Sequence record: MK250019.1
Reading direction: 5' to 3' (one strand)
DNA: 64,000 bases
Part shown: positions 4,995 through 53,200 of the stretch, one piece after another
Layout: each line of letters starts with the position of its first letter
How positions within the stretch are numbered: the first letter of the stretch is position 1
Translations under genes and position numbers: made by a program
Notes under the pieces: generated by a model
Told to the model about the DNA's origin: nothing
Database searches by the model: none
What the model saw: only the letters and a program-made list of their open reading frames with translations

Positions 4995-5534
4995 ATGGAT
5001 ATGGATTTTAATACTAAAGTATAGTTTACGAGAACACGTAATGTAAAGATGCCTAATAGAGCAAATAAGCATGATGCAGGTACAGATTTTTTTGTGCCTT
5101 ATTATAATTAGGAGTTTCTTGTTGATTTGATTAAGAAGAATACAGGTAATAAGATTTTCTATAAGATTGAGAATGATGATTTGTTTATCACTATTCCGGC
5201 TGGTGAACAGGTAATGATTCCATCAGGAATCAAGGTATGGATTAATGATAAGAGAACATATCTTCAGGCAACTAATAAATCTGGTGTTGCTTCAAAGTAT
5301 CATCTTGATGTTATGGCAAATACTATTGATGCAGATTATCAGGGAGAAGTTCATATTAATCTTTGTAATAATGGTAATACAGACATTACCGTTCAGACCG
5401 GTCAGAAACTTGTACAGTTTATTCATCAGATTTATCTTGATACTGATTGGGTTGAAATGGATGAGAAAGAATATGATGAGATTGAAGCATCAGACAGAGG
5501 TGATGGAATGGCAGGTTCTACCGGAACATTCTAA
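4995..5534 (+). CDS. dut: trimeric dUTPase (179 aa, code 15)
   Basis: read-through of TAG at 5022 and 5109 restores motif 1 'RANKHDAGTDFFVP'; downstream NKSGV, IDADYQGE, RGDGMAGSTG motifs. Confidence 0.95.
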
Positions 5535-5557
5535 AAAAATAAAATATATTTAAGAAT

Positions 5558-6079
5558 ATGAATAAGCTACGTAATTTCGAGTTTGAATATAATGGAGAAA
5601 AATATTGGTATTCACGTTCTATAACAGTTGCAACTTGTATTTTCTGTAAGGATTCAGATGGAAATTGGTGTGCATTAATTAATAAAAGAGGTAAAGGTTG
5701 TCCGACTGCTGTTGGAAAGTGGAATGTGCCTGCAGGATATTTGGATCATGATGAAGATATATGTTCATGTGGTATGAGAGAAACATATGAAGAAACAGGT
5801 CTTATTATTCCAAGGGTATTAATGAATTTTTATGCAATTAATTCAATTCCAGATACAAAACGACAAAATGTAAATGTGATATATTATGTTGTTCTTCCTG
5901 GTGTTATTGATGATTATCAGTTAACAACTGAACATTCAGAACCAGATGAAGTAGATGATATAATGTTTATACCAATATCAATGATATTTACATCTGATAT
6001 ACAAATTGCATTTAATAATGATAACATTTTATTGGACGTGTATAATAAGATTATCATTAATCATAATAAAAGTAAGTAA
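5558..6079 (+). CDS. Nudix hydrolase
   Basis: Nudix box GYLDHDEDICSCGMRETYEETGL. Confidence 0.9.
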   Translation: MNKLRNFEFEYNGEKYWYSRSITVATCIFCKDSDGNWCALINKRGKGCPTAVGKWNVPAGYLDHDEDICSCGMRETYEETGLIIPRVLMNFYAINSIPDTKRQNVNVIYYVVLPGVIDDYQLTTEHSEPDEVDDIMFIPISMIFTSDIQIAFNNDNILLDVYNKIIINHNKSK

Positions 6080-6138
6080 TTTTTTATCCTTGAATTATTT
6101 TATAATAGTTCAAGGATTTTTTATTATAAATTATTTAA

Positions 6139-6148
6139 TGTATCTTTG
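6139..6148 (+). promoter_or_regulatory. Bacteroidota RpoD-type -7 element TGTATCTTTG (copies also at 8941, 9336, 28086, 38452)
   Basis: five identical intergenic 10-mers containing TAnnTTTG, each upstream of a gene start. Confidence 0.75.
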
Positions 6149-6154
6149 TAAAAG

Positions 6155-6183
6155 TAAACAAAATAGTTTTTTAACATTATAAT
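6155..6183 (+). promoter_or_regulatory. TAAAC(A/T)-N17-TATAAT promoter-like motif (also 21549, 30736, 35903, 40140, 44237; AAAACT variants at 24687, 50128)
   Basis: exact 17-nt spacer counted at all eight intergenic sites. Confidence 0.75.
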
Positions 6184-6211
6184 AGTTTATAATGAATATA
6201 AAATAATTATC

Positions 6212-6604
6212 ATGGGACTTAAATTTAAAAATCAAAATCCAATTTCTGATAATAATACATTAAAAGTGTATTTCTGTACACAGACTATAAGTGATGATCC
6301 AAATGATGCATGGTCAGATGATGATATTATTATTGTATATCATATTGCTGCAACAACGGTAGATGAAGCTGTTGATCTTTGGATTGAAAAATATTCTGAT
6401 ATTATATGGAAAGATAAAACAAGAGAAGATTTTACAAGAAAAGATTATTGGGAAGCATGGATAGATCATAATAGAGAAAAAACTTATAATGCATATTTAA
6501 ATAAAATTTCAAAATTAAAAAGGAAACTAAGTAAATCAATGATAGAAATTCCCGGTATTTTTCATATTGGTAAACCTTGTGTACTTTTAAAATCAAAATT
6601 ATGA
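6212..6604 (+). CDS. hypothetical protein
   Basis: 130 aa ORF, TGA stop overlapping next ATG. Confidence 0.7.
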   Translation: MGLKFKNQNPISDNNTLKVYFCTQTISDDPNDAWSDDDIIIVYHIAATTVDEAVDLWIEKYSDIIWKDKTREDFTRKDYWEAWIDHNREKTYNAYLNKISKLKRKLSKSMIEIPGIFHIGKPCVLLKSKL

Positions 6605-15454: not shown

Positions 15455-17029
15455 ATGAATAAAAATATGGTTTATAGTGCTAATGAAGCAACTTCTTTAA
15501 CTGATAAAGTTGCAGATTTTACAAAGGGTAAAAACATTCACTTTGGTTCTGGTGCATTTGAAGAATAGAAAGTTGTTGCTATTGCAACAGCAGCTGAATC
15601 TGATGCAAAGGTTCGTTTCGTATATGATGCAATAGGTGATTCTGGTATGGTATTTGTTGGTAATCAACTTGCATCTTCTAAGATTCTTGACATTACAACA
15701 AATAAAGTAGCAAAGAAACATTTTGATCCTGAAACTGGTAATTATGTAGAATCAACTACAGAAAAAGTTGCAACTAAGGTAACAGTTACATGGTTTGGTT
15801 CTCAGGAAGATCCAAAAGATAATGTTGTAAAGACACAGACATGGACTACTGTATTTGATGTTATTGATACAGATACAGTAAAAGCAATGATTGATAAAGC
15901 TTCAGCAGATTTAAATAAATCAGTTGATGATTTAAAAACAAAGCATGAAGCAGACGTTTTACGTTTAGATACATCAGTTAACGGCATTGAGACACTTCTT
16001 AAGAGCGATGTAGTTTCAGCTGACACGGGTAGTGCACTTACAGTAACTCATACTGCTGCTGATGCAACAGGTTATAAGACTTATAAGGTTGCAGTTAACG
16101 TAGATGATGCAGAAGGTTCAACTATTAAGGTTGTAGATAATAAGATTAAGATTGCAAAGTATGCAATTAAGCAGGTTGCTGCGGATTCTATGGAAAAAGA
16201 TGCAGATACTAATGAAACAAAGTATGCATCTGAATATCAGTTAATGATGACTGATGCTGATGGTGTTACAAAGGCAGTTGGTGATAAGATTAACATTGCA
16301 AAAGACTTCTTAGTAACTAAGGCACATGTATGTACATTTAAGTATGTTGCTGAAAATGGCGCAGAAATTAAGTATGATGTACAACTTGAAGATCAATGGG
16401 GTAATTCTCCAGCAGTTAAATATGGAGATGAAGTAACATCAGAAAATCAGCTTCCATGGTCTAAGAATCAGGATGGTACATGGGAACAAGCACGTCTTGG
16501 TTTCGGTATTAAGTATGGTCATTCATATTTACACTTAGTTATCAATACTAAGCCAACTAATACAAAAGCTGCTAGACTTGATGATGTTTATCTTGATTTT
16601 ACAGAAATCTTTACAACATTCAAGGGTGATGATAAATTCATCAAGGTTGAGAATGGCGTTGTTTCTTTGGATATTGATGCTGTTTCATCTAAAGTTGATG
16701 AAAAACTTAAGGTTAATGATACATTCACAGAACTTAAGGCAAAAGATGAAGCAATTGAAGGTCGTCTTAATGGATTAGATACATCTGTAAGCAATATTGA
16801 GAAATCATATGTAACAGATGCATCTCTTGAAGCGCCAAAGGCAGATAATGCACAGTTCAATACTTTAAAGATTACAAATCATAAAGTTGTTGATGGTGTT
16901 GCAAAAGACACAGAGGTTACTGTAGATGTTGCAAATGAAAAATATTATGCAGGATTAAATACAGCATTAAATACACTTACAGAAAATGATAAACATCTTT
17001 CTGCACTTCTTACATGGGAAGAACTCTAA
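15455..17029 (+). CDS. putative virion fibre/structural protein 2 (524 aa, code 15)
   Basis: ATG 15455 in frame via one TAG; SSKILDITT motif; ends LTWEEL. Confidence 0.75.
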
Positions 17030-17131: not shown

Positions 17132-19075
17132 ATGGCTATTACTATTAAAAAGTCAATGATTAATGGTGCTCCAGTTATTTTTGGCGCTCCTGCTGATGCA
17201 GATACTGCAAAAGGTGTAGAAGTAAAATTTGGTTATGGTACACTTGAGAATGTACTTGCAAAAGTTGGTACTGCAGATGACGGCGTAATCTATTTCGGTT
17301 ATGATGATGCTAAATCAACTGGTGCAATTGTTTCACGCGGTAAACTTGTTTCTTCAAAAATTCTTGATATTACAACAACTGCTGCTGTAACAGGAGAAGG
17401 TGGTAAAGTAACAAAAGAAGCATAGATTGTAATTTCTTATATTGATACTGATAAGTCTGTTAAAACATTAGAAATTCCTGTTTCTGCTGATGGTAAATTA
17501 AAAGATCTTGCTGATAAGATTGAAGCTCTTAAAACATTAGTAGGTACAAAGGCAGATACTAAAGATACTGATACAGTATTCGGTGCAATTGCAAAAGAAA
17601 CAGATCGTGCAACTACTAAAGAAACTGCAATTTCCGATCTTCTTGGAACAAAGGATGATGATAAAACAAAAGAAACTGCATTTGGTAAGATTGCTACTGA
17701 AGTAGCGCGTGCAACTGATGCAGAAACAGGATTATCAAATAGAATCAAAACACTTGAAGATAAAAAGTATACAACAGTTAATGCAAAAACAGATGGTCAT
17801 GTAAAAGTTGCTGTTTCTGATGATAATGTTGTAACTGTAACAGAAGATGATATTGCATCTGCTGCACTTCTTGGTACTGTTGATGATGTTGCTGGTACTG
17901 CAACTGCATTTGGAAAGATTGCTAATGAAACAACGCGTGCAACTGATGTTGAAGGTAAGTTAGATACTCGTGTAACTAATATTGAAACACTTATAGGTGA
18001 TGCAGAAAAGCCAGATGAAGATAAAGTAATCAATAAAGTAACTGAAGTAATTGATTGGTTCAAAGGCGTTTCTGAAACCGAAAAAGGTGCAACACTTATT
18101 TCTGATGTTGCTGCTAATAAAACAGCTATTGGTACAAAAACTGTAGAAAATACTAATAGCATTTATAAGAGAATTGAAGATCTTGAAGCAAAGAAACATA
18201 CAAAAAGTGATGTAACTGCTGATGCTGGTAAATGTGTATCAGGTATTCGTGTTGATGAAAATGGTGCATTAACAATTGATCAAGCTGAATTATCTGCTGG
18301 TAATATTAATGCTACTGCAATTGTAGCAGGTGATGATACTGTTGCAGTTGAAGGTGATAAGGTTGCTTCATAGATTGAAAGTTTAGCTAAGTCTATTAAG
18401 ACTGCTACAAAGTCTGCTGATGATGCAATTAAGGCACTTGATGTTACAGATACTGCAGTAGAAGGAAAATATGTTTCTGCTGTTTCTGAAGAAGATGGTA
18501 AGATTACAGTTACACGTGCAGATCTTCCTACACTTTCTGTTAAGACAGGTTCAGAACAATTTGCAGCTGTTAATAACCATGAAGTTGAAATCAAGACTAC
18601 CGCATTAAATACTGTTGGTCTTACAAAGACTGAAGCCGGTAAATGGCAAGCAGGTACTGCTGATGCAAAATCAACTGGTCTTGCAACTGCTGCAGATGTT
18701 GCCGCAGAAATCGTATCAGATGAAGAGGTTATTGCAACAGCTCTTAATGACCATGAAAATCGTTTAAAGACAGTAGAAGGTAAAGAAATTACTGTTTCTT
18801 CTGCTAAGTATGATGTTGCTATTTCTGTTGCAGAAGTAAAAGATAGCGATGTTGTTACTACAGCTGCAACTAATTTCAATGTTACTGGTGGTAAAATTAC
18901 ATTTACTATTCATAATGGTGATAAAGCTGTTGCAGAAACAATTACTGCATATACAGAAGATACTGTTAAATCTCTTGTTGAACTTTATGCAAAGGAAAAA
19001 GCTCGTGCTGAAGCTGCAGAAGCTGATCTTGATAAGAGATTAACTTGGGTTGAATTGAATAAGCAAGACAAATAA
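17132..19075 (+). CDS. putative tail-fibre-like protein 3 (647 aa, code 15)
   Basis: TAG at 17423 and 18371 read through; repeats FGxIAxExxRAT; SSKILDITT; ends LTWVELNKQDK. Confidence 0.75.
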
Positions 19076-29710: not shown

Positions 29711-30733
29711 ATGGACGTTACTAAAATAAAAACATATTTAGCAAGTAATAAAGTTTGTTTTGTTACAAACTCATTAGCAATGCCGAGTACGTTATTAGTT
29801 TCATCTCTAAAAACATATATAGAATATATTCCTATATAGAATTTCTGGTTAATTCCTGGTATAAGAGATAATAAACCATTTTATGGAATAGATGCATTTC
29901 TTTTAATGTTGAATTATTTCTTATCAAATAAGAATTTTGATTATGTTATCTATATAGATGAAGATTGTTTTATAACTGATTTTTATTCATTAGTAAATGA
30001 ATTTATGAATTTTACAGAAAGTGGTTGTGTATTAGCAGGACCACAAGATGGTGGAGTTTTTTGTCATAGAAATCATAGTCGATTGATGATTAATACTTTC
30101 TTAAGTTTTTGGAATATAAAATTACTTAGAGATAAAAAAATAACATTTAATAATATTATTAATTATATTTCTAATGAATTTAAAAATAATTCCAATACTT
30201 TATATAAAGATTTTATACAGAAATTAATAATTAATAATGATAAATTATTATTTACGTATATGAATGAAAAATCAATGAATATGATAAACGATGTAAAAAC
30301 ATTTCGTGAAAGTAGAGTTGATTTACCAAATCATGAAACACCTTATTGTAAAATAGTAAGAGATGATCCTAACAACAAGATAGAGCCTCATCAAATTCCA
30401 TATAGTTGGGATGACGATGTTGCAGAAATTAATTTTGAACCTTATTATATAATTGAACAAGCATTAATAATATTATCTGATTCACCGATATATTATTTGT
30501 TTGGAACAGACTTATATGATTCAGATTATATAAAGAGAAATGTAACATTTGATACATCAGGATTAACATCTGCAATTTTTTCTTATAAACAAGATAATGA
30601 GTTTTATGATAGAAAATTGATTGCTGTTCATACATGGTTTAGCAGAGCATATACAAAATGGCCTCAAACAGAAGAACAGTTAAATCATACAAAACGAATT
30701 AATTCAATTATTAAGAATTTTTCTAGAATTTAA
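29711..30733 (+). CDS. putative GT-A fold glycosyltransferase (340 aa, code 15)
   Basis: ATG 29711 in frame via one TAG; FDYVIYIDEDCF DxD motif. Confidence 0.6.
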
Positions 30734-34405: not shown

Positions 34406-35902
34406 ATGAATAATACGTATCTTGAAAACGTTATATTCNNNNNNNNNNNNNNNNNNNNNNNNCTTGTTTAGTCATTTAAAGGAAGTTATTTTACTAATCC
34501 TTATTTAAAAACTTTATTTGATATTATTAAACCACATATATTGGAATATAGAGCTGAACCAACTGAACAGCAATCTATAGATTTAGTAAAACTTGCAAAT
34601 AAAGAAGATAAGGTAACAGAAGATCAAATACATGCTTTATGGCAAACAAGAGATATGGTTAGCCAATATACAGATGAATGGTTAAATCAGAATACATAGG
34701 CATTTGGTGAATGGCAAAACCTTATGAGTGGTCTTAGACGTGTTATTGAATATGTAAAAACTATTCAAGCTGATGTTACATTTGAAAATTGTGCAGAGAT
34801 TGTTCAGCATGCGAAATCAATGTTTCAATCAGATACTAATTTTACATTGAACAATTCAAAAGGACATGATTTCTTTGATCCTGTTAATCATAAGCAAACT
34901 GAACTTGAAACTAGAAAGACTGGTTATAATTTTGTTGATCAGTGTTTGAAAGGTGGTTGGGCGAATAAAACATTAAATGTATTTATGGGTTCACCAAAAG
35001 TAGGTAAGTCTATGTGGCTTTGTAATTTATGTGCTAATTCTGTAAGAAATGGAGAGAATTCTGCATATATTACATTGGAGATGGCGTATCAGCTTGTTGC
35101 ACAACGTATCGGTTCAAATCTTTTTAATATTCCTATCGAAGAATATGAAAAAAGTGCTGCAGATGCAAATTTTATGCAACAGAAGATGAAAGAATTTTAT
35201 ATGAATTCACTTATCACACCAGGTAAGTTTATCATAGAAGAATTCCCAACATCATCTGCAACTGTATATGATATAGAATCTTTCTTACTTAAATTAGAGG
35301 AAGAACTTTCTACTGAAGCAAAACCTTTTAAATTTAAGAACATTTTCATTGATTATGTTAATATCATGAAAGATGCGAAGAATCCTAATTCAGAAAGTAC
35401 ATATTTGAAAATTAAGTCTATTTGTGAAGATGTTCGTGCGATGGCACAAAGAAATAACTGGTGTGTTATTTCTTTAACTCAGACAAATAGAACTGCATAT
35501 GATTCAACTGATATTGGTATGAGTAATGTTTCTGAATCTGGTGGTTTGATTGCAACAGTTGATAGTTTATTCGGTATTATTCAATCTTCAATGATGCGTG
35601 TTGATAATACATATTATTTAAAAGCTGTTGCTATTCGAAATTCTGGACATATGGGAGATAAAAAGAAATTTGATTTTAATCCAACATATTTAAGAATTGA
35701 AGAAAATCTTGATGAAAATATTATTCCTGAAAATGTATCACTTGATGGTTTAGTAAAAGATAAACATAAGAATGATAATACAGGAAATAATAATTATCAG
35801 CAATATCCTACAAATGTTGGAGTTCGTCCAAATGTAATAGAATCACCTCAATTAGGATTAACAGAAACACAAATACAGGCACAAGATTTATTTAGCATGT
35901 AA
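34406..35902 (+). CDS. replicative helicase (T4 gp41/DnaB-like), code 15, spans a 24-N gap
   Basis: ATG 34406 in frame via 2 TAG; Walker A GSPKVGKS, ITLEM, IDYVNIM, TQTNR, SESGG. Confidence 0.9.
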
Positions 35903-35968: not shown

Positions 35969-36460
35969 ATGGCAAGAATTAATACTACAAAGATGCTTAG
36001 TAATGATGGGTATTTTTCAAGTAATGACTATAATCCTGATCTTTCTAATCAAACAATGACTGTATCACCTCTTGTGGCAGATTAGTATGACTACGCTATG
36101 ACTGATGATATAGTCTTGTTACATGAAAGAAAAGATACAGAAGAAATATTATATAACATATGGATTAATTCACCATATGCTAAACAATATGAGGTAAATT
36201 CTTCTACTTTTGTCATACCAAAGATACCTAAAGAAGAAACAAGTAAAATCTTTTATTACATGAAAAATAAGCTTGCAGAAGTAAAAACGTTATCTGCATA
36301 TGAAATGGTAATCGCTATAAATGAATTCTTTAATTTTAATTATGATTATGTGGTAAAGAAAGTATTATCACCTAAACTTAAAGCAGAGATATTAGCAGAT
36401 TATTATAACAATGGAATGAAGGAACGAATGGATACTAATGCATCTGTGAAATTATTTTAA
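35969..36460 (+). CDS. hypothetical protein (163 aa, code 15)
   Basis: ATG 35969 in frame via one TAG; promoter motif at 35903. Confidence 0.7.
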
Positions 36461-39093: not shown

Positions 39094-40137
39094 ATGGAAA
39101 CAATTATAATTTATATGCTGATAGCTATTATTATATCAGCTATTTGTTCTTTGTGTGAAGCTTGTTTGTCTTCAACACCAATGTCGTTTGTATCAACACT
39201 TAAGGGGAAATCAGGCGCTGATATTTTGCGAAATTTTAAAGAGAATATGGATAAACCTTTATCTGCTATTCTTATTATTAATACAATCGCAAATACAGTA
39301 GGTGCATCTATTGTTGGTTCTGCTGCTGCTTCTTATGCTGTTGAGCAAGGTATAGATGGTGCAACATTTATTGGTATTATATCTGCAATATTTACTGTTC
39401 TAATTCTTATGTTTGCAGAAATATTACCAAAAACTATTGGAGCAAATTATTGGAAATCTCTTACATTGTATGTAACTCGTGTAATTAATGTAATGATTTA
39501 TATTACATATCCATTAGTAAAATGCTTGAATTTTATTACACGTCTTATGAGTAATGAAAATGCTGTTTCAATTTCACGAGAAGAAATTATAGCGATGACT
39601 GATGAAGGCGCAAAAGAAGGTGTTATTGATAAGAAGGAAAATATGATTATTCAACGTATATTGAAACTTAATCAATATAAAGCAGAAGATATTATGACAC
39701 CTGCAAGTGTTGTATATTCAGTTGCAGATTATGCAAATCTTTCTAAGAATAGTAGTTTGTATGAGAGTCTTACTGATGGTAGTACATTTTCTCGTATTCC
39801 TGTAATGAATAAAAACAATTATTGTGTTGGGTATATTCTTAAAGATGAGTTGGATTTGAATGATACAGATAATGTAAAGATTTCTAATATTACACATTCA
39901 ATTCATAATTATATTGATTCTACAGATGTCGCAGATATATTTAATGATATGGTAAAAAATCATGAACATATTTCTGCAATTACAGATGAGTATGGAACAT
40001 TTAGAGGTATTGTAACATTAGAAGATGTTATTGAAACAATTTTGAATATTGAAATTGTTGATGAAACAGATGATGTTCAGGATATGCAGGAATATGCAAA
40101 GGAGCAGTATCATGAAGTAATGAAGGATAACATTTAA
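39094..40137 (+). CDS. CNNM/HlyC-CorC family membrane protein (DUF21 plus CBS pair)
   Basis: SLCEACL, ILIINTIAN, FAEILPKTIG, IMTP, FSRIPV, DEYG..GIVTLEDVIE. Confidence 0.92.
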   Translation: METIIIYMLIAIIISAICSLCEACLSSTPMSFVSTLKGKSGADILRNFKENMDKPLSAILIINTIANTVGASIVGSAAASYAVEQGIDGATFIGIISAIFTVLILMFAEILPKTIGANYWKSLTLYVTRVINVMIYITYPLVKCLNFITRLMSNENAVSISREEIIAMTDEGAKEGVIDKKENMIIQRILKLNQYKAEDIMTPASVVYSVADYANLSKNSSLYESLTDGSTFSRIPVMNKNNYCVGYILKDELDLNDTDNVKISNITHSIHNYIDSTDVADIFNDMVKNHEHISAITDEYGTFRGIVTLEDVIETILNIEIVDETDDVQDMQEYAKEQYHEVMKDNI

Positions 40138-41527: not shown

Positions 41528-42649
41528 ATGGAAAATTCAAATGTAGCAATGTTTAATGATAAGGGTCAGGTAGAAACCCTTACTCAAAGTCAGTATAACT
41601 ATGATCAGCGAATTGCTGTTATGTCTGCTGATGAGAAAGCAAAGTATTTACAGAAGACGGAGAAGCTGGACCGTCATGATATGACTACAGTAACTTCATA
41701 TGGTAAAGAATTGAGTTCTGTTATTTCCCGGAATGGCGATAATCTTCTTAATTCTGTTCGTGGAGATAATTCGTCTGTGGTTGTACAGCTTACAAATGAA
41801 CTTCTTAGTCAGCTTAATCTTATTGATATTGATGAGATTAATACTAATACTCGATGGAAGAAATTCTGGAGAAACTTCCCTATTATTGGGAAGATGATGA
41901 CTTCTGTTGAGTCTATTATGACTAAGTATGATACTATTAAAGATAGTGTTACAAAGATTGGTGAAAAGATTGATACTGCACGTACAGTTGCATTACGTGA
42001 TAATTCAACACTTAATCAGATTTTTGACGCTAACGTTTCATATATTGAGCAAATTCGTGAACTTATTCTTGCTGCAAAGATTCGTGAACAGTCAGTTAAG
42101 GATGAACTTGAAAACATGAAGGCTCATGCTAATGATTATGAGATGTATGAGATTAATGATACCCAAAATTTCGTTAATCAAATTCAGAAGAAGATTGTTG
42201 ATATGGAAACAACTGAATATGTTTTGACACAGAACCTTCTTCAGATCCGTGCAACACAGCAGAATAATGTTGCAATCGCAGATAAGTCTGATAATATTGT
42301 AAATAATGTTTTGCCATTGTGGAAGAATCAGATTTCTATCAGTATTATTATGAATAATCAGAAGAATTCTATTGAGGCACAGCAAAAGATTACTGATACA
42401 ACTAATAAGATTTTGCGTGAGAATGCAAAGGCACTTCATATGAATTCTGTTAATGTTGCTAAGGCAAGTGAAGAGTCTGTTATTAAGCTTGATACACTTA
42501 AGGACACTACACAGGAACTTATTCAGACAATTCAGGAAGTTAAGAATATTCATGATCGTGGAGCAGAAGAGCGTAAGGAATATGAATCTCATTTGCGTGA
42601 GTTTGCACGTCAACTTGAAATTTCATTAACAGATAACGATAATAAGTAA
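41528..42649 (+). CDS. telA: toxic anion resistance protein (TelA/KlaA family)
   Basis: helical 373 aa with YGK, IRATQQNN, LPLWKNQI, NAKALHMNS patterns. Confidence 0.85.
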   Translation: MENSNVAMFNDKGQVETLTQSQYNYDQRIAVMSADEKAKYLQKTEKLDRHDMTTVTSYGKELSSVISRNGDNLLNSVRGDNSSVVVQLTNELLSQLNLIDIDEINTNTRWKKFWRNFPIIGKMMTSVESIMTKYDTIKDSVTKIGEKIDTARTVALRDNSTLNQIFDANVSYIEQIRELILAAKIREQSVKDELENMKAHANDYEMYEINDTQNFVNQIQKKIVDMETTEYVLTQNLLQIRATQQNNVAIADKSDNIVNNVLPLWKNQISISIIMNNQKNSIEAQQKITDTTNKILRENAKALHMNSVNVAKASEESVIKLDTLKDTTQELIQTIQEVKNIHDRGAEERKEYESHLREFARQLEISLTDNDNK

Positions 42650-44293: not shown

Positions 44294-46333
44294 ATGCAAA
44301 AAGGTAATATTGGAGTTACTAGTTAGGATATTTTTCCATTAATCAAGAAATTTATGTATAATGATCAGGATATTTTTATCCGTGAGATCGTAAGTAATGC
44401 AGTTGACGCATCAGAGAAGTTAATTAAAGTTATTAGTGCAAATGAGTATACAGCAAATCCAGATGATTTAAAAGTTACAGTTACTATTAATCATGAAGAT
44501 AATACTATTACTGTTTCTGATATGGGTATTGGTATGACTGCTGATGAAATAGAAAAGTACATTAATCAGATTGCATTTTCAGGAGCAAATGACTTCTTAG
44601 AGAAATATAAGGATACACAGATTATTGGTCATTTTGGACTTGGATTTTATTCAAGCTTTATGGTAAGTTCAAAAGTTGAAATTGTATCAAAGTCATATAA
44701 AGAGAATTCAAAAGCATGTAGATGGACATGTGAAGGAACTACAGAGTTTACACTTAAGGATGATGATAAAGAATCTGTAGGTACCGATGTAATTATGCAT
44801 ATTTCTGATGAATATAAGGAGTATGTAAATGAAAGTAAACTTATGGAACTTTTAAAGAAGTACGCAGAATATTTACCTATTCAAATTTATCTTAAAGATG
44901 TTCCTGCACCAACTACTGATTCATCTACCGGTGAAGTTACATATCCAGAATCACATGAAACAAAAATTACACGAGATGAACCATTGTGGTTAAAATCTGC
45001 ATCAGAACTTAAAGATGAAGATTATATTAAGTTCTATAAGGAAACATTCCCTAATAGACCTGAACCACTTTTCTGGATTCATATTAATATTGATACACCG
45101 TTTACATTTAAGGGAATTCTTTATTTCCCTGCATTTGATCAGAAACATCCTATTTTTGAGCGTAAGCATCTTAATTTGTATTGTAATCGTGTATTTGTGA
45201 CAGATGATGTAGATGGAGTATTACCAGATTATTTGAGTCTTCTTCATGGTGTAATTGACTCTCCTGATATTCCATTGAATGTTTCTCGTTCAGTTCTTCA
45301 AAATGATGCTAATGTTAAGAAGATTAGTTCACATATTACAAATAAGGTTATGAGTTCACTTCGTACACTTATGAAGAAAGATAGAGAAACATATGAGAAA
45401 AAGTGGGAAACAATTAAAACCTTCATTAATCTAGGCGTTGTAACAGAACCTAATATTTTTGATAAAGCAAAGGATATTATTCTTCTTGTTGATACTGATA
45501 ATAAGATGTATACTTTTGATGAATATTATGATAAAGTATCAGAAACACAGAAAGATAAAGATGGTAAAATTGTATATTTGTATACATATGATACTGCTAC
45601 ACAATATACTTATATCGATGCTTTAAAGAAATACGGTTATAATATTCTGCTGTTTAATAGTCAATATGGAGCATTTGAAGTACATACATTTGAAATGAAA
45701 TTACAAGAAAAGAATGTAACATTTAAACGTATTGATGCAGATGTACCAGAAAACCTTATTAAGAAAGAAGAAGATACAACAAAGAAAGAAAAACCTGTAT
45801 CTGAGAATATCAAGAGTATGTTGGTATCTATGTTTGATTGTATTGAGCTAAATCTTCCTAAAATTACACATCAGTATATTGTTCAGCAAGATGGTAAAGA
45901 TGCACTGCCTATTACTATTGTTGCAGATGAGTTCTTCCGTCGTATGAAGGAAATGTCAATGCTTAATAATGCTGGTATGTATTTGGAAAATAATGCATCT
46001 ATTAAGATTATTATTAATGCAGATTCTAAAGTTGTAAAGAAGATTATTAAGATTGCAGAAAAAGAAATTGGTCAGCAAATTAATGATATTAATGAAAAAG
46101 TTAAAGATATTAATACAAGATTGGAAGCTGCTGATACAGATGATGCAAAGAATTCTATTAAAAAAGAACTTGATAACATTATTGCAGAGAAAAAGGAAAT
46201 TATTAATAAACATGCACATGCAGATAGTCATATTCATGAATTAATTGATATTGGTTTGTTACAGTATGGTTTATTATCAGGTGAAGATTTGGCAGCATTT
46301 GTTAAGAGATCTATAAAGATGATTGAAAAGTAA
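44294..46333 (+). CDS. htpG: Hsp90 chaperone HtpG (679 aa, code 15)
   Basis: MQKGNIGVTS-TAG-DIFPLIKKF matches the Bacteroidota HtpG N-terminus; REIVSNAVDA, DMGIGM, IGHFGLGFYS, LNVSR. Confidence 0.95.
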
Positions 46334-46744: not shown

Positions 46745-47539
46745 ATGAAGAAAATCGTATTGAATTTGATTGTCATACTAATGACATGTATGAGTTTTGT
46801 ATCTTGTGCTTATGAGAGAGTTGATGCAGGATGTGAAGGTATTTATGTAAATCTTTATGGTGACGATAAAGGTGTAGGTGAAGTTAGTCTATGTACAGGA
46901 GCTGTATGGTATTGTCCATTGACTCATGATGTATTTGAATATCCTACATATATTCAGACTGTAGATTATCCATCATTTGAAGTTAATAGTAAAGACGGTA
47001 CAAAATTTACTGTTGATCCTGCAGTTCTCGTAAAAATAGAAGATGGTAAATCACCACTTATTTTTAAAAAGTATAGAAAGCAGCTTGATGAAATTGTAAA
47101 GAATACTTTATATGTTTATATCAGAGATGCAGCACGTATTGAATTTAATAAGTATACAGCAGACCAGATTGTATCAAATCGTGAAGCAGTAGATAAATCA
47201 TTTGAGGAACGTGTAAGAAAAGGATTTGCAAGTGAACATTTTATTCTTCAGCAATTAACGCCAGGTATTGGTTATCCTAAATCATATGAAGAAGCTATTA
47301 ATGCTAAGAATAAAGCAATTCAAGATGAAATGCGTGTCAGCAATGAGATTCGTGTAGCTGAGGCAGAAGCAAAGAAAAAACTTGTTCTTGCAGAAGCAGA
47401 AGCGAAGGCAAACAAATTGAAAGAACAATCACTTACACCATTGCTTATTCAGAAAATGGCAATTGAAAAGTGGTCAGGAAATTTGCCAGATACATATGTA
47501 GGTAGTCATGGTATTCCTAATTTGATTTTAGGAAAGTAA
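46745..47539 (+). CDS. SPFH/band-7 (prohibitin-like) protein, probable lipoprotein
   Basis: signal with FVSC; RVDAGCEGI; AEAEAKK..AEAEAKAN coiled coil; IEKWSG. Confidence 0.9.
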   Translation: MKKIVLNLIVILMTCMSFVSCAYERVDAGCEGIYVNLYGDDKGVGEVSLCTGAVWYCPLTHDVFEYPTYIQTVDYPSFEVNSKDGTKFTVDPAVLVKIEDGKSPLIFKKYRKQLDEIVKNTLYVYIRDAARIEFNKYTADQIVSNREAVDKSFEERVRKGFASEHFILQQLTPGIGYPKSYEEAINAKNKAIQDEMRVSNEIRVAEAEAKKKLVLAEAEAKANKLKEQSLTPLLIQKMAIEKWSGNLPDTYVGSHGIPNLILGK

Positions 47540-48307: not shown

Positions 48308-49107
48308 AAATCATATCAAAATATAAGGATTTCTATGACTCATATGGATTTATTCTTGGTAAACCAGATGAGAGTATAACTTATGTCCGTACAACAGAAG
48401 TTATAGATGATGATAATAAGCAATATAAGTCAATCATCAAGAAAATTTATGATTATGGACATTTGTATTTTCATGTTTATGGATTTAAAGAAGATTATGT
48501 TGCATGGGTAGAAAGTGTTGTATGTGGTATATATCCTTATATATACGTATGTCCTTTTTATGTGATTATGCAACAATTAAATAAAGGTAGAACATTTATA
48601 CCTATTGATTTAAAACCTATACCAATATCAGAAGAATTTGTACATGATAAAAGTAAAAGAGAACATATTTATAATAAGGTACAAACAAAATTTGATGAGT
48701 ATTGCGATAAAAATAATATAAAAGGAAAATTACATATACAAAAAATTAGAGAAACCAATTATTCATGGTCTAATGCAAAATTTAAATTTGAAACGCAAAG
48801 TTGGAAGATAGAGGAACTGGATATATTCAGAGAATTAAATGTACCAACTTTTATGTATGTATGTAAAAATGATGATATTGCAAGATATGTTAAAGATTAT
48901 GGATTAACACTTAATCCTATATTTGTTAAGCAAAATTTTGATGTATTAGGTGCTAATAGAACCAGAATAATTAATGAACAGAATGTTTATATAGATATAG
49001 AAAATTTTTTGTGGGAAATGAAAAAGGAACCTGAATCAATTCCTGATAATAAAACAAAAATTATAAATGCAGGGTTTGATTTGAAAACATCATTTAGAAA
49101 TATGTAA
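48304..49107 (+). CDS. hypothetical protein
   Basis: 267 aa; ATGA coupling. Confidence 0.7.
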   Translation: MKIISKYKDFYDSYGFILGKPDESITYVRTTEVIDDDNKQYKSIIKKIYDYGHLYFHVYGFKEDYVAWVESVVCGIYPYIYVCPFYVIMQQLNKGRTFIPIDLKPIPISEEFVHDKSKREHIYNKVQTKFDEYCDKNNIKGKLHIQKIRETNYSWSNAKFKFETQSWKIEELDIFRELNVPTFMYVCKNDDIARYVKDYGLTLNPIFVKQNFDVLGANRTRIINEQNVYIDIENFLWEMKKEPESIPDNKTKIINAGFDLKTSFRNM

Positions 49108-49116
49108 TATTTTATT

Positions 49117-49374
49117 ATGAGAATAGTAACAGTTAAAAATGATAAAGGTATATACATACCACCATTTATGTCTGACTTTACAAAAGAAGATTCAGACCTT
49201 ATTGGTAAATTATGGGATATATCAACTAAACATGGATACATAGCAGATTCACTAGGTGGTACACAATGTTTAGCATTAATGTATGATGAACTTCCATGTT
49301 ATTTTAAAATTTTATTTAAAAATGTAGAAAGAACTGAAGTATCATATGAAGATTATAAACGAGGTTTTTGGTAA
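49117..49374 (+). CDS. hypothetical protein
   Basis: 85 aa ORF. Confidence 0.6.
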   Translation: MRIVTVKNDKGIYIPPFMSDFTKEDSDLIGKLWDISTKHGYIADSLGGTQCLALMYDELPCYFKILFKNVERTEVSYEDYKRGFW

Positions 49375-49381
49375 TTAATAT

Positions 49382-50098
49382 ATGAAGCAAGAAAGAAAAA
49401 CAGTAGTAGCAGGTCCACATATATTAAAGTTTAATATATCAGATATTAATAGAATATTTTTTACAAGTGATATACATGCAAATCATGCGAATATTATAAA
49501 ATACTGTAATAGACCATTTACAGATGTTAATGAGATGAATCATGTTTTATTTAAGAATTTAAATGATTCATTATCAAGTATAGATAATGCTATACTTATA
49601 AATTGTGGTGATTTTATCTTTAGTAATGTAAGTACATATGATGAAATGGTTAATAACATTAAAGCTGAAAAAGTTTATAATATAATTGGTAATCATGATG
49701 TAAAAAACGTGTTACAGAGAAGAAATATAGTACCTTATAATGAAGAAAGTAAAGTATATTGGAGTACAGAACTTATTGTACAAATATATGATGATTATAA
49801 AGATAAAATACTTCTGCAATTTACAGTATCACATTATCCACATTGTGATGGACAATTCTTAGGTAAATTTAATATTCATGGTCATTTACATACACCAAAA
49901 AATATAGAAGATTATACAGGTACAGATGCGAATATTGCTAAAAAGTTAAAAGAAAAAGCAATGACATATGATGTTGGTGTAGATGGAAATGATTATAAAC
50001 CAGTAAAGTTAACTGATATATTAACAGGAAATTTAATTCAATATCAACTTAGAGATATTGATTTTAATTATTGGAAAAATAAAATTAAAAATATTTAA
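49382..50098 (+). CDS. calcineurin-like phosphoesterase
   Basis: FTSDIHANH, GDF, GNHD, SHYP, IHGHLH, DVGVDG. Confidence 0.9.
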   Translation: MKQERKTVVAGPHILKFNISDINRIFFTSDIHANHANIIKYCNRPFTDVNEMNHVLFKNLNDSLSSIDNAILINCGDFIFSNVSTYDEMVNNIKAEKVYNIIGNHDVKNVLQRRNIVPYNEESKVYWSTELIVQIYDDYKDKILLQFTVSHYPHCDGQFLGKFNIHGHLHTPKNIEDYTGTDANIAKKLKEKAMTYDVGVDGNDYKPVKLTDILTGNLIQYQLRDIDFNYWKNKIKNI

Positions 50099-50234
50099 AA
50101 TATTTAAGTGCTAATAAAGTTTATTGCAAAACTTTATTATCATTTTTTTGTATAATAATTAATTAATATTTTGATATTTCATAGTATCAAAGAATAAATA
50201 AAATACCTAAAATAAAATAGAAAGAAAATTAAAT

Positions 50235-53200
50235 ATGAAGGTAACAAAACGTGATGGTAGTTTTGAGAATTATAGTGTTTAGACAGTTAAACGTGCAGTT
50301 AGAGAAGCGTTTAAGTCAACAAAGACTAAATACTCAAAAGACACAATTTCGAATATTGTAAGTTCTATTACGCCATATGATGGCATTCCTGTAGAAGAAA
50401 TACAGGATCAGATAGAAACAAGTTTGTATTCTCATGATCAGCCTAAAGTTGCAAAAGAATTTATTCTTTATCGCAATAAGAAGAAGGAAATCAGAGAATG
50501 GGTTGCTAATAAAGAAGCATTTATTGAAAGATATAAAAATGCATCAAATACTGCAAATAGTACAATTGATGATAATTCTAACGTATCATCTAAGAACATC
50601 GGTGTATTAAATGCAGAAATTCATAAAGGTGATAATATTCTTGTAAGTAGAGGAATGATTACAAGAAAATTAAAAGATTTATTCCCTGATTTTAAAGCAA
50701 AACAATATCAAAAAGATTTAAAAAATCATATTATCTATAAGAATGATGAATCAAGTTTTGCTGGTGCTATAAGTCCTTATTGTGTTAGTGTATCTATGTA
50801 TCCATTTCTTAATCATGGATTGGAAAAGATTGGAGGATTGTCATGTCATCCACAAAATCTTGATTCCTATTGTGGTATGTATGTAAATCTTGTATTTGCA
50901 GTTGCAGCACAATTTGCAGGAGCAGTAGCAACATCAGAATTCTTGGTATATTTTGATTATTTTGCACGAAAGGAATTTGGAGATGATTACTATTTGCATA
51001 GTAAAGAATTCTATAAGATTGGTCCAAAATATCGTAAGTTACTTAATGAATCTAATTACTGGTGTAAAGATGTAGATACACTTAGAAAACATGATTTTGG
51101 TACAGATGAATTAAATAAATTGAGAGATGAACTTGTTTATAATTCGGAACGACCATTATCTGATGAAGAACTTAAAGAATATGAAACAGAACTTTCTAAA
51201 TATGATGTAGAAGGTTCAATAAAAGATTTTACAAATCCTATTAAGATTGGTGATGGTACAAGAACTATTGGTTCATGTATACAACAATTCTTCCAACAAG
51301 TAGTGTGAATTGAACGCACCCCTAATCGGTGACGATTAGGTAAACTCCATGTGAATTGCAGGGACTCTAAAATAATGAAGAAAATAATTTAATATTTTGA
51401 TTAAAAATATATACAACTTATTATAAATATTAAAATAATAGTATATATTACATGAAAATTACAGATAATAATATAGATGAAATAAAACATATGTATATTG
51501 ATGAACATCGTTCATATCAAGAAATTGCTGATTATTATAATGCAACAATATCATAGGTTAAAAATTTTTTATAGTCTAGATAGATAAAACGAAGATTTGC
51601 GCAAAGTAAATTAAATCAAGAATAGTTTGATAAAATTAAAGATTTATATTTAGGTGATAAAAAATATCCTGTATCTAAAATTTCAAAAATGTTAAATATA
51701 AAAGAATCAATAATAAGAAATTATATATTTGATAATAAATTAACAAGAAAAGAAACAGGAGATGAACGACGTTTAACAATACCATATGAAACACTATATG
51801 ATTTATATATAATTAAAAAGTTAGATAAAAATGAAATTTAGGAAAAATTAAATATATGTCGACAAACTTTAAATAAAAATTTAAAATTTTATAAATTAAC
51901 CAATAAGTATTCAAATTATACAGATAATGATATTTGTAAAATGTATAAAGATGAATATAAAAGTTTATCAGATATAAATAATATTACAAATTTTCCTAAA
52001 TCACGAATAAGATAGATTTTAATAAAAAATAATATATAGTTACGAGATTATCGTTTAAGTTAGATGACAAAAAGTAAAGCATATTTTGAGTATGATATGA
52101 GTTTATTAAATAAGCAATCTTTATTAAAGCGTAATTGCTATAGTTATTTTAAATCTCATATATCAACACAAATAAAGAAAGAACGAAATATGTGTGAATG
52201 TTGCGGTTCAACAGAAAATTTACATTGTCATCATATTAAACCATATTCATTAATTGTTAATGAGATTATAAAAGAAAATAAAAATTTATCTGATACTGAA
52301 TTATATAATGTAATTACTCATGATTCTAGATTTTTAGATACAAATAATATTAAAGTTGTATGTGAAAAATGTCATTATACGATATTTCATTCATACCTTC
52401 ATTATCAAGGGAATCGTGCAGCCAAGCCTAATAATTAGGAAGGTTCAACGACTATCGAAAACATAGAATAAACAAATAAGAGTTTATTTGAAGAAGTGAG
52501 TAGAGTACATAACAAGTGTTATGGAAGTGCATGGCAACTTAATCTAATCAATTAAGTTGGAGAAATAGTCTAAACGAATTTTTAATTCCCTCTATTACTG
52601 AAATGTAATAGTTGTCTATAGAAATATAGAGCAGTTATAAACTGAATATAAATTAACGATTTATATTTAATATATTTGATTCAATTAACCAACCCGCAGC
52701 AAGTCGTGGTCTGCAATCTGCATTTGTAAATTTCTCTTATTTTGATAAGCCTTTCTTTGAAGGTATGTTTGGGGAATTTGTATTTCCAGATGAAGAAGGT
52801 ACAAGACCTTGTTGGGAAAGTGTTTCATGGTTGCAGAAAGATTTTATGATTTGGTTTAATAAAGAGCGCCTTCGTACTATAATCACTTTCCCTGTTGAAA
52901 GTTTTGCATTGGTATATAAGGATGGAAAGTTTGTAGATGAAGATTCTGCAGATTTTGTTGCAGAAGAATATTCTCGTGGTCATTCATTCTTTACTTATAT
53001 GTCAGATACTGTTGATTCATTATCAAGCTGCTGTTTCGATGGTGATACACCATTTATGTTTGTAGAACCTCTTAATATGGAAGAGCATGGTGGTAATAAT
53101 GCATATATGGTTTCAACTATTAAAGATGCATATGAAAAATATAAAGATGATATAATTAATGTATATCATATGAATTTTAATGGTACTACAGGTAAATGTA

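What the first reader, a model, noticed from the sequence alone, without database searches (positions are those of the whole stretch)
4995..50282. Single TAG codons close to the start of otherwise TAG-free metabolic genes (possible translational gates)
Seen: HtpG (679 aa) has its only TAG at codon 11, NrdD exons only at codon 16, the zinc-ribbon gene at codon 10, and dUTPase at codons 10 and 39. The helicase has two TAGs in its N-terminal part and the 35969 gene one at codon 39. Inference: N-terminal placement would abort translation cheaply until suppressor tRNA is available or RF1 is inactivated, coupling dNTP supply, replication and chaperone output to the code switch.
Basis: inference. Interest (0 to 1): 0.65.

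Follow-up and report, generated by a model that had tools for sequence, protein, structure and literature searches.

The report
Early amber codons in Lak megaphage
In this giant gut phage, which reads the stop codon TAG as glutamine, many important genes keep TAG out of their whole length except for one copy within about the first 20 codons. The pattern is real, genome-wide and apparently undescribed; it ties their translation to the phage's code switch, but whether it was selected as a "gate" is not proven.

Summary
The window is Prevotella phage Lak-A2 (541 kb; TAG read as Gln, two tRNA-CUA genes, its own RF2).

- **More than chance.** Of 47 single-TAG genes, 20 have the TAG within codons 2-20 (4-5 expected; 0 of 3000 permutations). 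With starts confirmed in Lak-B1 the count is 13 of 27 (2.4 expected).
- **Not a pipeline artefact.** A standard-code relative run through the same pipeline gives 0 N-terminal TAGs.
- **Specific to TAG.** TAG is 8-fold enriched at gene starts; no other codon exceeds 2.7-fold.
- **Specific to the 5' end.** The last 10 codons hold 0 TAGs among 57 Gln-type codons.
- **Conservation.** About half of the sites are conserved in Lak-B1. HtpG and NrdD of more distant Lak-like phages carry TAG at the same or other N-terminal Gln sites.
- **Gene class.** It includes the major capsid protein and DNA polymerase B, not only metabolic genes. It never has the host-type early promoter motif and often has the late-type one.
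- **Against a selected gate.** The N-terminal TAG share never exceeds that of TAG-rich genes, so position-dependent cost explains the skew. A selected gate stays possible.

The parts
3437..4255 (-). Zn-ribbon gene (272 aa). Its single TAG is codon 10, at 4226-4228.
   Evidence: In Lak-B1 the aligned codon is AAG, and B1 has a TAG 12 codons further on.
4995..5534 (+). dUTPase (179 aa). TAG at codons 10 (5022-5024) and 39 (5109-5111), on either side of the AGTD motif.
   Evidence: Pfam PF00692, E 7e-16. Both TAGs are conserved in Lak-B1.
15455..17029 (+). Gene of unknown function (524 aa). Its single TAG is codon 38 (15566-15568).
   Evidence: Lak-B1 has GAC there and a TAG at codon 18 instead.
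29711..30733 (+). Gene of unknown function (340 aa). Its single TAG is codon 43 (29837-29839).
   Evidence: Lak-B1 has a Gln (CAA or CAG) there and a TAG at codon 13.
34463..35902 (+). DnaB-like helicase, the part to the right of the N gap. TAGs at 34469-34471 and 34697-34699. The start and the codon numbers are uncertain because of the gap 34439-34462.
   Evidence: PF03796 DnaB_C, E 1e-18. This is the only open frame right of the gap. The first TAG is conserved in Lak-B1. The second is Val in B1, which has a TAG 6 codons later.
35969..36460 (+). Gene of unknown function (163 aa). Its single TAG is codon 39 (36083-36085).
   Evidence: The TAG is conserved in Lak-B1, which has a further TAG at codon 7.
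44294..46333 (+). HtpG/Hsp90 chaperone (679 aa). Its single TAG is codon 11 (44324-44326), in the conserved N-terminal segment.
   Evidence: Pfam HSP90, E 3e-44. The N-terminus aligns from residue 1 with Bacteroidaceae HtpG. TAG codon 11 is kept in Lak-B1 and in 3 of 8 more distant lineages. Two other lineages carry their only TAG at codon 25 or 40.
50235..51308 (+). First piece of the anaerobic ribonucleotide reductase NrdD (ATP-cone plus the start of NRDD). Its single TAG is codon 16 (50280-50282).
   Evidence: PF03477 over residues 1-85 and PF13597. TAG codon 16 is kept in Lak-B1 and in two distant lineages. Two others have CAA/CAG at codon 16 and TAG at codon 31.
55003..55791 (+). C-terminal NrdD piece, TAG-free.
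   Evidence: PF13597, profile positions 305-560, E 1e-43. No TAG.
51452..56984 (+). TAG-rich homing-endonuclease genes between the NrdD pieces: HNH 51452-52471 (9 TAGs), GIY-YIG 53815-54714 (6) and HNH 55923-56984 (3). Each has ATAAATAT about 30 nt upstream (51423, 53783, 55895). They contrast with the TAG-poor host gene.

Best explanation
Shown: Lak-A2 reads TAG as a sense codon (Gln). It has two tRNA-CUA genes and its own RF2, and it infects a host that reads TAG as stop.

Shown: genes fall into three groups.
- About 100 genes lie in units behind a host-type promoter motif (TATCTTTG, which fits the Bacteroidetes -7 element TAnnTTTG). Practically all are TAG-free.
- TAG-rich genes mostly sit behind an ATAAATA(T) motif about 30 nt upstream of the start.
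- An intermediate group has a TAG-free body and one (rarely two) TAG within roughly the first 20, at most 40, codons. It holds HtpG, NrdD, dUTPase, the helicase, DNA polymerase B, nucleases and the major capsid protein.

Inferred: TAG is a costly codon, because it is decoded by a suppressor tRNA in competition with RF1 and is therefore slow or leaky. The cost grows with the distance already translated.
- In genes under strong selection for efficient translation, TAG has been purged everywhere except at the very 5' end.
- There, a ribosome that waits or terminates has invested almost nothing and still sits within one or two footprints of the start site, so little is wasted and no queue forms.

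Consequence: output of these proteins scales with TAG-decoding capacity. They are in effect throttled by the code switch. The skew itself needs only position-dependent purifying selection, not selection for a gate.
For: - Identity and machinery.
- 5' skew: 20 of 47 single-TAG genes have the TAG within 20 codons, against 4-5 expected; 13 of 27 against 2.35 with validated starts.
- Profile in genes of at least 250 codons with no TAG after codon 150. TAG share of Gln-type codons is 0.26 (codons 2-10), 0.18 (11-20), 0.07 (21-40) and 0.02-0.04 (61-150). Lak-B1 is similar.
- Specificity: TAG is 8.4-fold (A2) and 7.9-fold (B1) enriched at starts, against at most 2.7-fold for any other codon.
- The segments are coding. 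26 of 33 start ATGs align with an ATG in Lak-B1, and substitutions at codon positions 1/2/3 are 77/48/130. The ATP-cone and HtpG N-terminal homology span the TAG.
- Pipeline control on a standard-code relative: 0 N-terminal artefacts.
- The cost rises along the gene. The share falls from 5' to 3' in all classes, and in TAG-rich genes the logit slope is -0.17 per ln(position) in both genomes. The last 10 codons hold 0 of 57 (A2) and 1 of 53 (B1), against 14 of 57 and 12 of 53 in codons 2-11.
- No excess over neutrality. The N-terminal share is at or below the 0.45 of TAG-rich genes. For HtpG across 10 lineages it is 10 TAG against 13 CAA/CAG in codons up to 41, and 6 against 140 later. Counts per gene look Poisson.
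- Promoter classes.
Against: - The cost model is inferred. Nothing here measures TAG decoding speed, RF1 competition or expression level.
- A TAG at codon 10 lowers yield as much as one at codon 600, so the model needs waste or queueing, not yield, to be the selected cost.
- About half of the N-terminal TAGs are kept at the same site across roughly 27% protein divergence (17 of 33). Every one of the 6 NrdD lineages and 7 of the 10 HtpG lineages examined has at least one N-terminal TAG. Both also fit a selected gate.
- The step in the profile is not sharp or reproducible: the best break falls after codon 11 in A2 and after codon 22 in B1. The one-footprint argument is therefore weak.
- Lak-A2 and Lak-B1 are related, so their statistics are not independent.
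Confidence: 0.55

Rival explanations
1. Selected translational gate. One early TAG is kept by selection so that the protein is not made until the suppressor tRNA is abundant or RF1 is disabled. The 5' position is chosen because aborting there is cheapest.
For: - 17 of 33 N-terminal TAGs are conserved in Lak-B1.
- Where the site is lost, another N-terminal TAG is often present. Examples are codon 32 against 30 in the amidase, a swap between adjacent codons, the helicase, and the genes at 15455 and 29711.
- HtpG carries a lone TAG at codon 11, 25 or 40 in different lineages, and all 6 NrdD lineages have one at codon 16 or 31.
- No C-terminal TAGs are seen, although a protein missing only its last few residues would be expected to remain functional.
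- These genes share the late-type promoter motif and never carry the early one.
- The capsid protein, with its single TAG at codon 11, would be held back until the switch.
Against: - The TAG share at N-terminal Gln sites never exceeds that of TAG-rich genes.
- Counts per gene look Poisson, and most TAG-poor late-class genes have none.
- 3 of 10 HtpG lineages lack any TAG.
- The strict relocation test is weak: 1-3 cases, p 0.15 to 0.003 depending on the cut-offs.
- There is no special sequence context around these TAGs.
- The gate would duplicate the transcriptional timing implied by the promoter motifs.
Confidence: 0.3
2. Harmless-truncation tolerance. TAG is tolerated wherever premature termination gives a harmless product, because very short peptides cannot poison assemblies or waste much synthesis.
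For: The enrichment is confined to about the first 20-40 codons, and many of the genes encode multimeric or assembling proteins such as the capsid protein, HtpG, NrdD, dUTPase and DnaB.
Against: The model predicts equal tolerance in the last few codons, where the truncated protein would be nearly complete. Observed there: 0 of 57 and 1 of 53 TAG, against 14 of 57 and 12 of 53 at the start (p 5e-5 and 0.002). TAG is even depleted in the last 5 codons of TAG-rich genes.
Confidence: 0.07
3. Generic N-terminal codon bias: rare or AT-rich codons, or a 'ramp', at gene starts, with TAG behaving as just another rare codon.
For: Rare GC-rich codons are about 2-fold enriched in the first 20 codons. The length scale of 10-20 codons matches known N-terminal codon bias (my own knowledge: Tuller 2010, Goodman 2013).
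Against: - TAG is 8-fold enriched against at most 2.7-fold for any other codon.
- TAG has the same GC content as CAA.
- The effect is absent from early-promoter genes and from the standard-code relative.
Confidence: 0.05
4. Artefact: the true starts lie downstream, and the TAGs are upstream stops or 5'-UTR sequence swallowed by reading TAG as sense.
For: - A rough calculation suggested that about 8% of genes could be extended through a UTR TAG (my estimate before testing).
- Several genes have an in-frame ATG soon after the TAG, for example HtpG M21, and gene callers sometimes pick it.
Against: - The negative control gives 0 such cases in 450 genes.
- 26 of 33 start ATGs are conserved, with a coding-type substitution pattern.
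- Many genes have no alternative start for 30-120 codons.
- Domain homology spans the TAG in NrdD, HtpG, dUTPase and the Mre11-like gene.
Confidence: 0.03

Closest known systems
Stop-codon recoding as a post-transcriptional timer in gut phages (Borges et al., preprint 10.1101/2021.08.26.457843; Devoto et al. 2019, PMC6784885)
   Same: The same phage clade and code (TAG read as Gln), suppressor tRNA-CUA, phage RF2, TAG-free regions against TAG-rich structural regions, and the idea that in-frame stops delay translation until the code switch.
   Different: Those papers score genes as recoded or not. A text search of the Borges preprint for position-related terms found none, and term searches of the two Lak papers showed no passage on where in a gene the TAGs lie. 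Three things appear undescribed: the class with a single TAG in the first ~20 codons, the 5'-to-3' decline in all classes, and the lack of C-terminal TAGs. [quoted passage not shown]
prfB (RF2) autoregulation through an in-frame UGA at codon 26 (established knowledge)
   Same: A stop codon placed early in the reading frame makes output depend on the cell's termination capacity.
   Different: prfB needs a programmed +1 frameshift with a Shine-Dalgarno-like stimulator. Here the codon is read by a tRNA, no frameshift is needed, and dozens of unrelated genes are involved. The phage's own prfB is one open frame with no internal stop.
N-terminal codon bias or translational 'ramp' of slow and rare codons (my own knowledge: Tuller 2010; Goodman 2013)
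   Same: Slow or rare codons are tolerated or favoured in about the first 10-20 codons. A pause there limits initiation instead of causing queues.
   Different: The magnitude and specificity differ (8-fold for TAG alone). The effect depends on promoter and temporal class, and the codon is a reassigned stop.
Engineered amber-gated expression: a suppressor tRNA plus a gene carrying early amber codons, for example the supD / T7 RNA polymerase AND gate (recalled from memory, not checked here)
   Same: The logic is the same: protein is made only when the suppressor tRNA is present, and the amber codons are placed near the 5' end.
   Different: That system is synthetic. Here the arrangement is natural, and it is unproven that the position is selected for gating.

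Membership tests
Code-15 (TAG read as Gln) recoded phage, Lak clade | Near-identity to a described Lak genome | tested here: met
   100% identity to MK250019.1 (Lak-A2) over 14 kb.
Code-15 (TAG read as Gln) recoded phage, Lak clade | Reading TAG as sense restores long open frames | tested here: met
   Long-ORF total is 283 kb with the standard code and 456 kb with TAG as sense. Compare.
Code-15 (TAG read as Gln) recoded phage, Lak clade | Suppressor tRNA with anticodon CUA, and RF2 | tested here: met
   Two tRNA-CUA genes. prfB model TIGR00020 scores 406 bits, above its cut-off of 370.
Code-15 (TAG read as Gln) recoded phage, Lak clade | TAG aligns with Gln codons in orthologues | tested here: met
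   In TAG-rich genes, 396 TAG codons stay TAG in Lak-B1, 213 become CAA or CAG, and 346 become all other residues together. At HtpG sites 11, 25 and 41, TAG alternates with CAA/CAG across lineages.
Recoding as a timer of late genes (Borges model) | Early genes compatible with the standard code; late structural genes recoded | tested here: met
   93 of 97 genes in units with the host-type promoter motif are TAG-free. 104 of 213 genes in the ATAAATA class have 3 or more TAGs.
Recoding as a timer of late genes (Borges model) | Translation of recoded genes is actually delayed until the switch | not testable with these tools
   This needs time-resolved proteomics or ribosome profiling. Contigs from RNA libraries show only that the sequence is present.
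prfB-type autoregulatory early stop | Programmed +1 frameshift at the early stop | tested here: not met
   The frame continues straight through TAG, with conserved protein sequence on both sides.
Generic N-terminal rare-codon ramp | All rare codons similarly enriched at gene starts | tested here: not met
   TAG is enriched 8.4-fold and 7.9-fold; the next codons reach at most 2.7-fold.
HtpG/Hsp90, dUTPase, NrdD and DnaB families (identity of the focal genes) | Pfam domain match above the curated cut-off | tested here: met
   PF00183 at 152 bits, PF00692 at 58.6 bits, PF13597 and PF03477, and PF03796 at 68 bits.
Group I intron-split nrdD | A recognisable intron RNA between the pieces | tested here: inconclusive
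   No Rfam match at E up to 0.01 in 49000-59500. Homing-endonuclease genes lie between the pieces. The pieces were searched one by one and never joined.

The most novel reading that the evidence does not exclude
Early amber codons are an evolved sensor. A ribosome waiting at TAG within about one footprint of the start codon blocks further initiation. Each such gene would then be throttled directly by the balance between suppressor tRNA and RF1, without ribosome collisions or wasted synthesis. The same rule would shape recoded phages in general: an unrelated TAG-recoded phage, phAss-1, shows a hint, with 4 of 15 TAGs within 11 codons against 1.1 expected, starts unvalidated.
Probability: 0.25. 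Interest if true: 0.8.

Novelty: new variant of a known kind. Interest (0 to 1): 0.62.

Why it matters
Stop-codon recoding in gut phages is thought to time late gene expression, but so far only at the level of which genes contain recoded codons.

A strong, reproducible positional rule says something about what a reassigned stop codon costs during an infection. The rule has three parts: one TAG in the first ~20 codons of otherwise TAG-free genes, a 5'-to-3' decline everywhere, and none at the 3' end.

- It gives a concrete, testable design principle for natural and engineered amber-dependent expression.
- It matters for annotation. Standard-code gene callers cut off the true N-termini of key proteins, and in the public protein collection several HtpG entries start at Met21.
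- Together with the two promoter-like motifs, it offers a sequence-only way to sort the roughly 500 genes of an uncultured megaphage into temporal classes.

Tried and rejected
- **Start-miscall artefact.** My rough estimate was that about 8% of genes could be extended through a UTR TAG. Rejected by the standard-code control (0 of 450 genes) and by the Lak-B1 alignments.
- **Special context around N-terminal TAGs.** None found; the +4 base frequencies match those in TAG-rich genes.
- **Relocation test in strictly TAG-free-body orthologue pairs.** Only 1-3 cases, with p between 0.15 and 0.003 depending on cut-offs. Too weak to carry a claim.
- **Extra conservation of TAG.** Retention of 17 of 33 is about that of an average codon in the same segments, so there is no clear excess.
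- **Sharp step at one ribosome footprint.** The best break falls after codon 11 in A2 but after codon 22 in B1. Not robust.
- **More distant relatives.** IMG/VR scans gave only A- and B-like contigs, and the phage collection had no divergent Lak HtpG. Divergent lineages came from the protein word search plus contig look-ups instead.
- **Other genomes.** LR756500.1 turned out to use the standard code and was used as the control. PV725988, a TGA-recoded phage, is not in the collection.
- **Introns.** Rfam found no intron RNA between the NrdD pieces. A distant NrdD query mapped only the first and last pieces. The pieces were searched one by one by reference and never joined.
- **RNA libraries.** Only contigs are held, so they show no transcript starts and do not show that the region is transcribed. 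They show that the HtpG region lies in contigs 95-99% alike from animal-gut runs.
- **Not used.** Structure prediction, complex prediction and the large representative search were not needed.

Full report
**What the window is.** The 64-kb window is 100% identical to Prevotella phage Lak-A2 (MK250019.1, 541,299 bp); window base 1 is record base 323,866.
- I fetched the rest of that record outside the window and kept the window's own N runs.
- Lak phages are described as reading TAG as Gln (code 15), with a tRNA-CUA and their own RF2 (PMC6784885 and PMC8346664).
- I confirmed two tRNA-CUA genes, a tRNA-UUA and a tmRNA. There is also a TAG-free prfB, matching TIGR00020 at 406 bits.
- Reading TAG as sense raises the total of long open frames from 283 kb to 456 kb.

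**The observation in the window.** With TAG read as sense:

| Gene | Coordinates | TAG codon(s) | Window position of TAG |
|---|---|---|---|
| HtpG (679 aa) | 44294-46333 (+) | 11 only | 44324-44326 |
| dUTPase | 4995-5534 (+) | 10, 39 | 5022-5024, 5109-5111 |
| Zn-ribbon gene | 3437-4255 (-) | 10 | 4226-4228 |
| NrdD first piece | 50235-51308 (+) | 16 only | 50280-50282 |
| Unknown gene | 35969-36460 (+) | 39 | 36083-36085 |
| Unknown gene | 15455-17029 (+) | 38 | 15566-15568 |
| Unknown gene | 29711-30733 (+) | 43 | 29837-29839 |

- The Zn-ribbon gene lies outside the stated range.
- The NrdD TAG lies inside the ATP-cone match 1-85.
- The C-terminal NrdD piece 55003-55791 is TAG-free.
- I could not place the middle of NrdD, and Rfam finds no intron RNA. 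The pieces were searched one at a time by reference and were never joined.

**The gap.** The helicase gene crosses the N run 34439-34462.
- I did not look at the homologous letters anywhere. The matching stretches of Lak-B1, and those matching the two other N runs at 4587-4636 and 4851-4878, were left out when that genome was fetched.
- To the right of the gap only one frame is open. It carries TAG at 34469-34471 and 34697-34699 and runs into a DnaB_C domain.
- Whether ATG 34406 is in the same frame, and hence the codon numbers, cannot be known.

**Are these TAGs really inside coding sequence?** Yes.
- HtpG aligns from its first residue with Bacteroidaceae HtpG. The TAG falls in the conserved N-terminal segment, where relatives have Gln, Lys, Thr or Glu.
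- Lak-B1 was fetched. It gave 430 reciprocal-best pairs with a median 73% protein identity.
- Of the 33 TAG-poor Lak-A2 genes with an N-terminal TAG that have a Lak-B1 orthologue, 26 have their start ATG aligned to an ATG in Lak-B1.
- Between start and TAG, substitutions at codon positions 1/2/3 number 77/48/130, a coding pattern.
- Many of these genes have no other in-frame start for 30-120 codons.
- As a control, I ran the same TAG-as-sense gene caller on LR756500.1. This is a 462-kb phage with 24% GC that uses the standard code, and its capsid protein is 38% identical. It yields 23 apparent in-frame TAGs: 20 in the last 40 codons (true stops read through) and none in the first 40.

**Genome-wide statistics.** My caller finds 493 genes in Lak-A2, of which 299 have no TAG.
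- Single-TAG genes (47): 20 TAGs lie in the first 20 codons, against 4.1-4.7 expected; none of 3000 permutations among Gln-type codons reaches that.
- Genes with 1-2 TAGs: 28 of 81 against 6.5-9.3 expected.
- Genes with 6 or more TAGs: 38 against 31-33 expected, not significant.
- Validated starts only: 13 of 27 against 2.35 expected.
- Classified independently of the tested region (genes of at least 250 codons with no TAG after codon 150), the TAG share of Gln-type codons is 0.26, 0.18, 0.07, 0.07, 0.09, 0.02, 0.04 and 0.03. The bins are codons 2-10, 11-20, 21-30, 31-40, 41-60, 61-80, 81-100 and 101-150. Lak-B1 behaves alike.
- TAG is the most start-enriched codon by far, 8.4-fold in A2 and 7.9-fold in B1; the next codons reach at most 2.7-fold.

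**Relatives.**
- In Lak-B1 the first N-terminal TAG is kept in 17 of 33 genes, becomes CAA in 3, and otherwise becomes mostly Glu or Lys codons.
- Among the focal genes, the TAGs of HtpG, NrdD, dUTPase (both), gene 35969 and the first helicase TAG are kept. Those of the Zn-ribbon gene, 15455, 29711 and the second helicase TAG are replaced, while another TAG sits nearby.
- Ten Lak-like HtpG lineages (55-100% identical; DNA) carry these TAG sets: [11], [11], [11], [25], [40], [11,41,336,607], [11,25,41,92,469,592,606],.
- Summed over those lineages, codons up to 41 hold 10 TAG against 13 CAA/CAG. The remaining ~640 codons hold 6 against 140 (odds ratio 18, p 1.4e-6; the lineages are related, but three different sites are involved).
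- Six NrdD lineages all have an early TAG: codon 16 in four, and codon 31 in the two that have CAA/CAG at codon 16. Some also have later TAGs.

**Which genes.** The class is not specifically metabolic. Pfam places the following in it:
- DNA polymerase B (TAG at codon 7)
- an Mre11/SbcD-like phosphoesterase (codon 9)
- a 5'-3' exonuclease (codon 28)
- an Amidase_3 (codon 32)
- a PD-(D/E)XK nuclease (codon 14)
- a gp25-like baseplate protein
- three DUF7487 proteins
- the gp23-like major capsid protein (661 aa; single TAG at codon 11, conserved in Lak-B1)

**Promoter-like motifs.**
- TATCTTTG has the extended consensus TGTATCTTTGTA. It fits the Bacteroidetes -7 element TAnnTTTG (my own knowledge). 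It precedes 39 of 192 TAG-free genes, 0 of 31 N-terminal-TAG genes and 0 of 89 TAG-rich genes, with the same pattern in Lak-B1.
- ATAAATA, 28-55 nt upstream of the start, precedes 8% of TAG-free genes, 39% of N-terminal-TAG genes and 62% of TAG-rich genes (Fisher tests).
- Propagated along co-directional units, 93 of 97 'early' genes are TAG-free.
- The tRNA-CUA genes lie in an ATAAATA-type region.
- TAG use in any form is therefore confined to the non-early class.

**Gate or cost?** Evidence that fits a cost that rises with distance from the start:
- The share declines from 5' to 3' in every class. In TAG-rich genes the logit slope is -0.17 per ln(position) in both genomes.
- The N-terminal share never exceeds the roughly 0.45 of TAG-rich genes.
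- N-terminal TAGs per gene follow a Poisson-like distribution: 252, 26 and 3 genes with 0, 1 and 2.
- Three of the ten HtpG lineages have no TAG.

Evidence against simple 'harmless truncation':
- The last 10 codons hold 0 of 57 (A2) and 1 of 53 (B1) TAG, against 14 of 57 and 12 of 53 in codons 2-11.

The best reading is therefore a codon whose cost grows with the length already translated, through waste or ribosome queues behind a slow, RF1-contested codon. At the very start that cost is negligible.
- A ribosome held within about 10-12 codons of the start would also occlude the initiation site. This is an inference from ribosome footprint size.
- The profile breaks after codon 11 in A2 but after codon 22 in B1, so support for that detail is weak.
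- Whatever its origin, an early TAG makes the protein's output depend on suppression.

**Outside Lak.** phAss-1 (OQ749652) is an unrelated TAG-recoded phage with 44% GC. It has 4 of 15 TAGs of its TAG-poor genes within the first 11 codons, against 1.1 expected (p 0.012). Its starts are unvalidated and the numbers are small.

**Literature.**
- The Borges preprint scores recoding per gene. Its text holds none of the position terms I searched for ('N-termin', 'early in', 'near the start', 'position of', 'truncat'). It says only that Lak replication genes are mostly in alternative code.
- In the two Lak papers, term searches on the genetic code, in-frame TAG, suppressor tRNA and release factor showed no passage about TAG position within genes.
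- Two full-text searches found no paper that reports such a bias.
- This covers only the held library.

**RNA libraries.** Contigs from four animal-gut metatranscriptomic libraries, 95-99% alike, lie across the HtpG region. In two of them a contig includes the start of the gene. No difference at the TAG is listed, but 54 differences were not shown. Contigs cannot show transcript ends or prove transcription.

**Limits.**
- The gene calls are my own simple model.
- Lak-A2 and Lak-B1 are not independent samples.
- The temporal classes rest on motifs alone.
- No expression or translation data exist for this phage.

Noticed in passing
window 6141, 8943, 9338, 27568, 28088, 38454, 60717 (+) and 36226 (-); 80 sites genome-wide: A conserved motif TGTATCTTTGTA, with a T-rich stretch about 25 nt upstream, lies a median 48 nt before start codons. 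It occurs only in front of TAG-free genes and fits the Bacteroidetes -7 promoter element TAnnTTTG. It is probably the phage's host-RNA-polymerase (early) promoter.
   Followed up: partly
window 12123, 14415, 51423, 53783, 55895 (+); 262 sites genome-wide: The motif ATAAATAT lies about 30 nt upstream of the start codons of TAG-rich genes. Its relaxed form ATAAATA precedes 62-65% of TAG-rich genes. It resembles a T4-type late promoter (TATAAATA) and is a candidate late promoter.
   Followed up: partly
window 51452-52471, 53815-54714, 55923-56984: Homing-endonuclease genes (HNH, GIY-YIG, HNH) sit between the NrdD pieces and are TAG-rich (9, 6 and 3 TAGs), while the host gene is TAG-poor. No Rfam intron family matches the region.
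   Followed up: partly
Lak-A2 record 144866-145845 (L003:44866-45845): The two suppressor tRNA-CUA genes flank a GIY-YIG 'group I intron endonuclease' gene that itself holds 10 TAG codons. Rfam's tRNA model reaches its threshold for only one of the two tRNAs.
   Followed up: partly
Lak-A2 record 211337-211409: A tRNA with anticodon UUA, which would read TAA, although TAA is the main stop codon (443 of 493 genes). The Lak literature notes it as unexplained.
   Followed up: no
window 4587-4878 (the two N runs) against Lak-B1: Synteny with Lak-B1 breaks here. Window 2135-4577 maps to B1 333-336 kb on the + strand, and window 4890-6597 maps to B1 219-221 kb on the - strand. The N runs therefore sit at a rearrangement boundary. 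The letters themselves were not looked up.
   Followed up: no
genome-wide, the last 5 codons of genes: Even in TAG-rich genes, TAG is under-used in the last 5 codons before the real stop (4 of 22 and 6 of 22, against about 0.43 mid-gene).
   Followed up: no
LR756500.1 (L042-L065), tRNA at 110652-110720: This 462-kb standard-code relative (capsid protein 38% identical) carries a tRNA-CUA but no RF gene and almost no in-frame TAG. It may represent a stage before recoding.
   Followed up: no
Lak-A2 record 122977-124524: The DNA polymerase B frame ends after the exonuclease domain and the first third of the polymerase domain (515 aa). The gene appears split, like nrdD.
   Followed up: no
window 15455-17029 and 17132-19075: Two adjacent large genes of unknown function look like paralogues; they share an N-terminal segment containing SSKILDITT. 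They have no Pfam match and are GC-richer than their surroundings (0.33 against about 0.25).
   Followed up: no
window 24749-26671, 39094-40137, 41528-42649, 46745-47539: TAG-free genes for an M13 peptidase, a CNNM/CBS transporter-like protein, TelA and an SPFH/Band 7 protein. These are unusual cargo for a phage.
   Followed up: no
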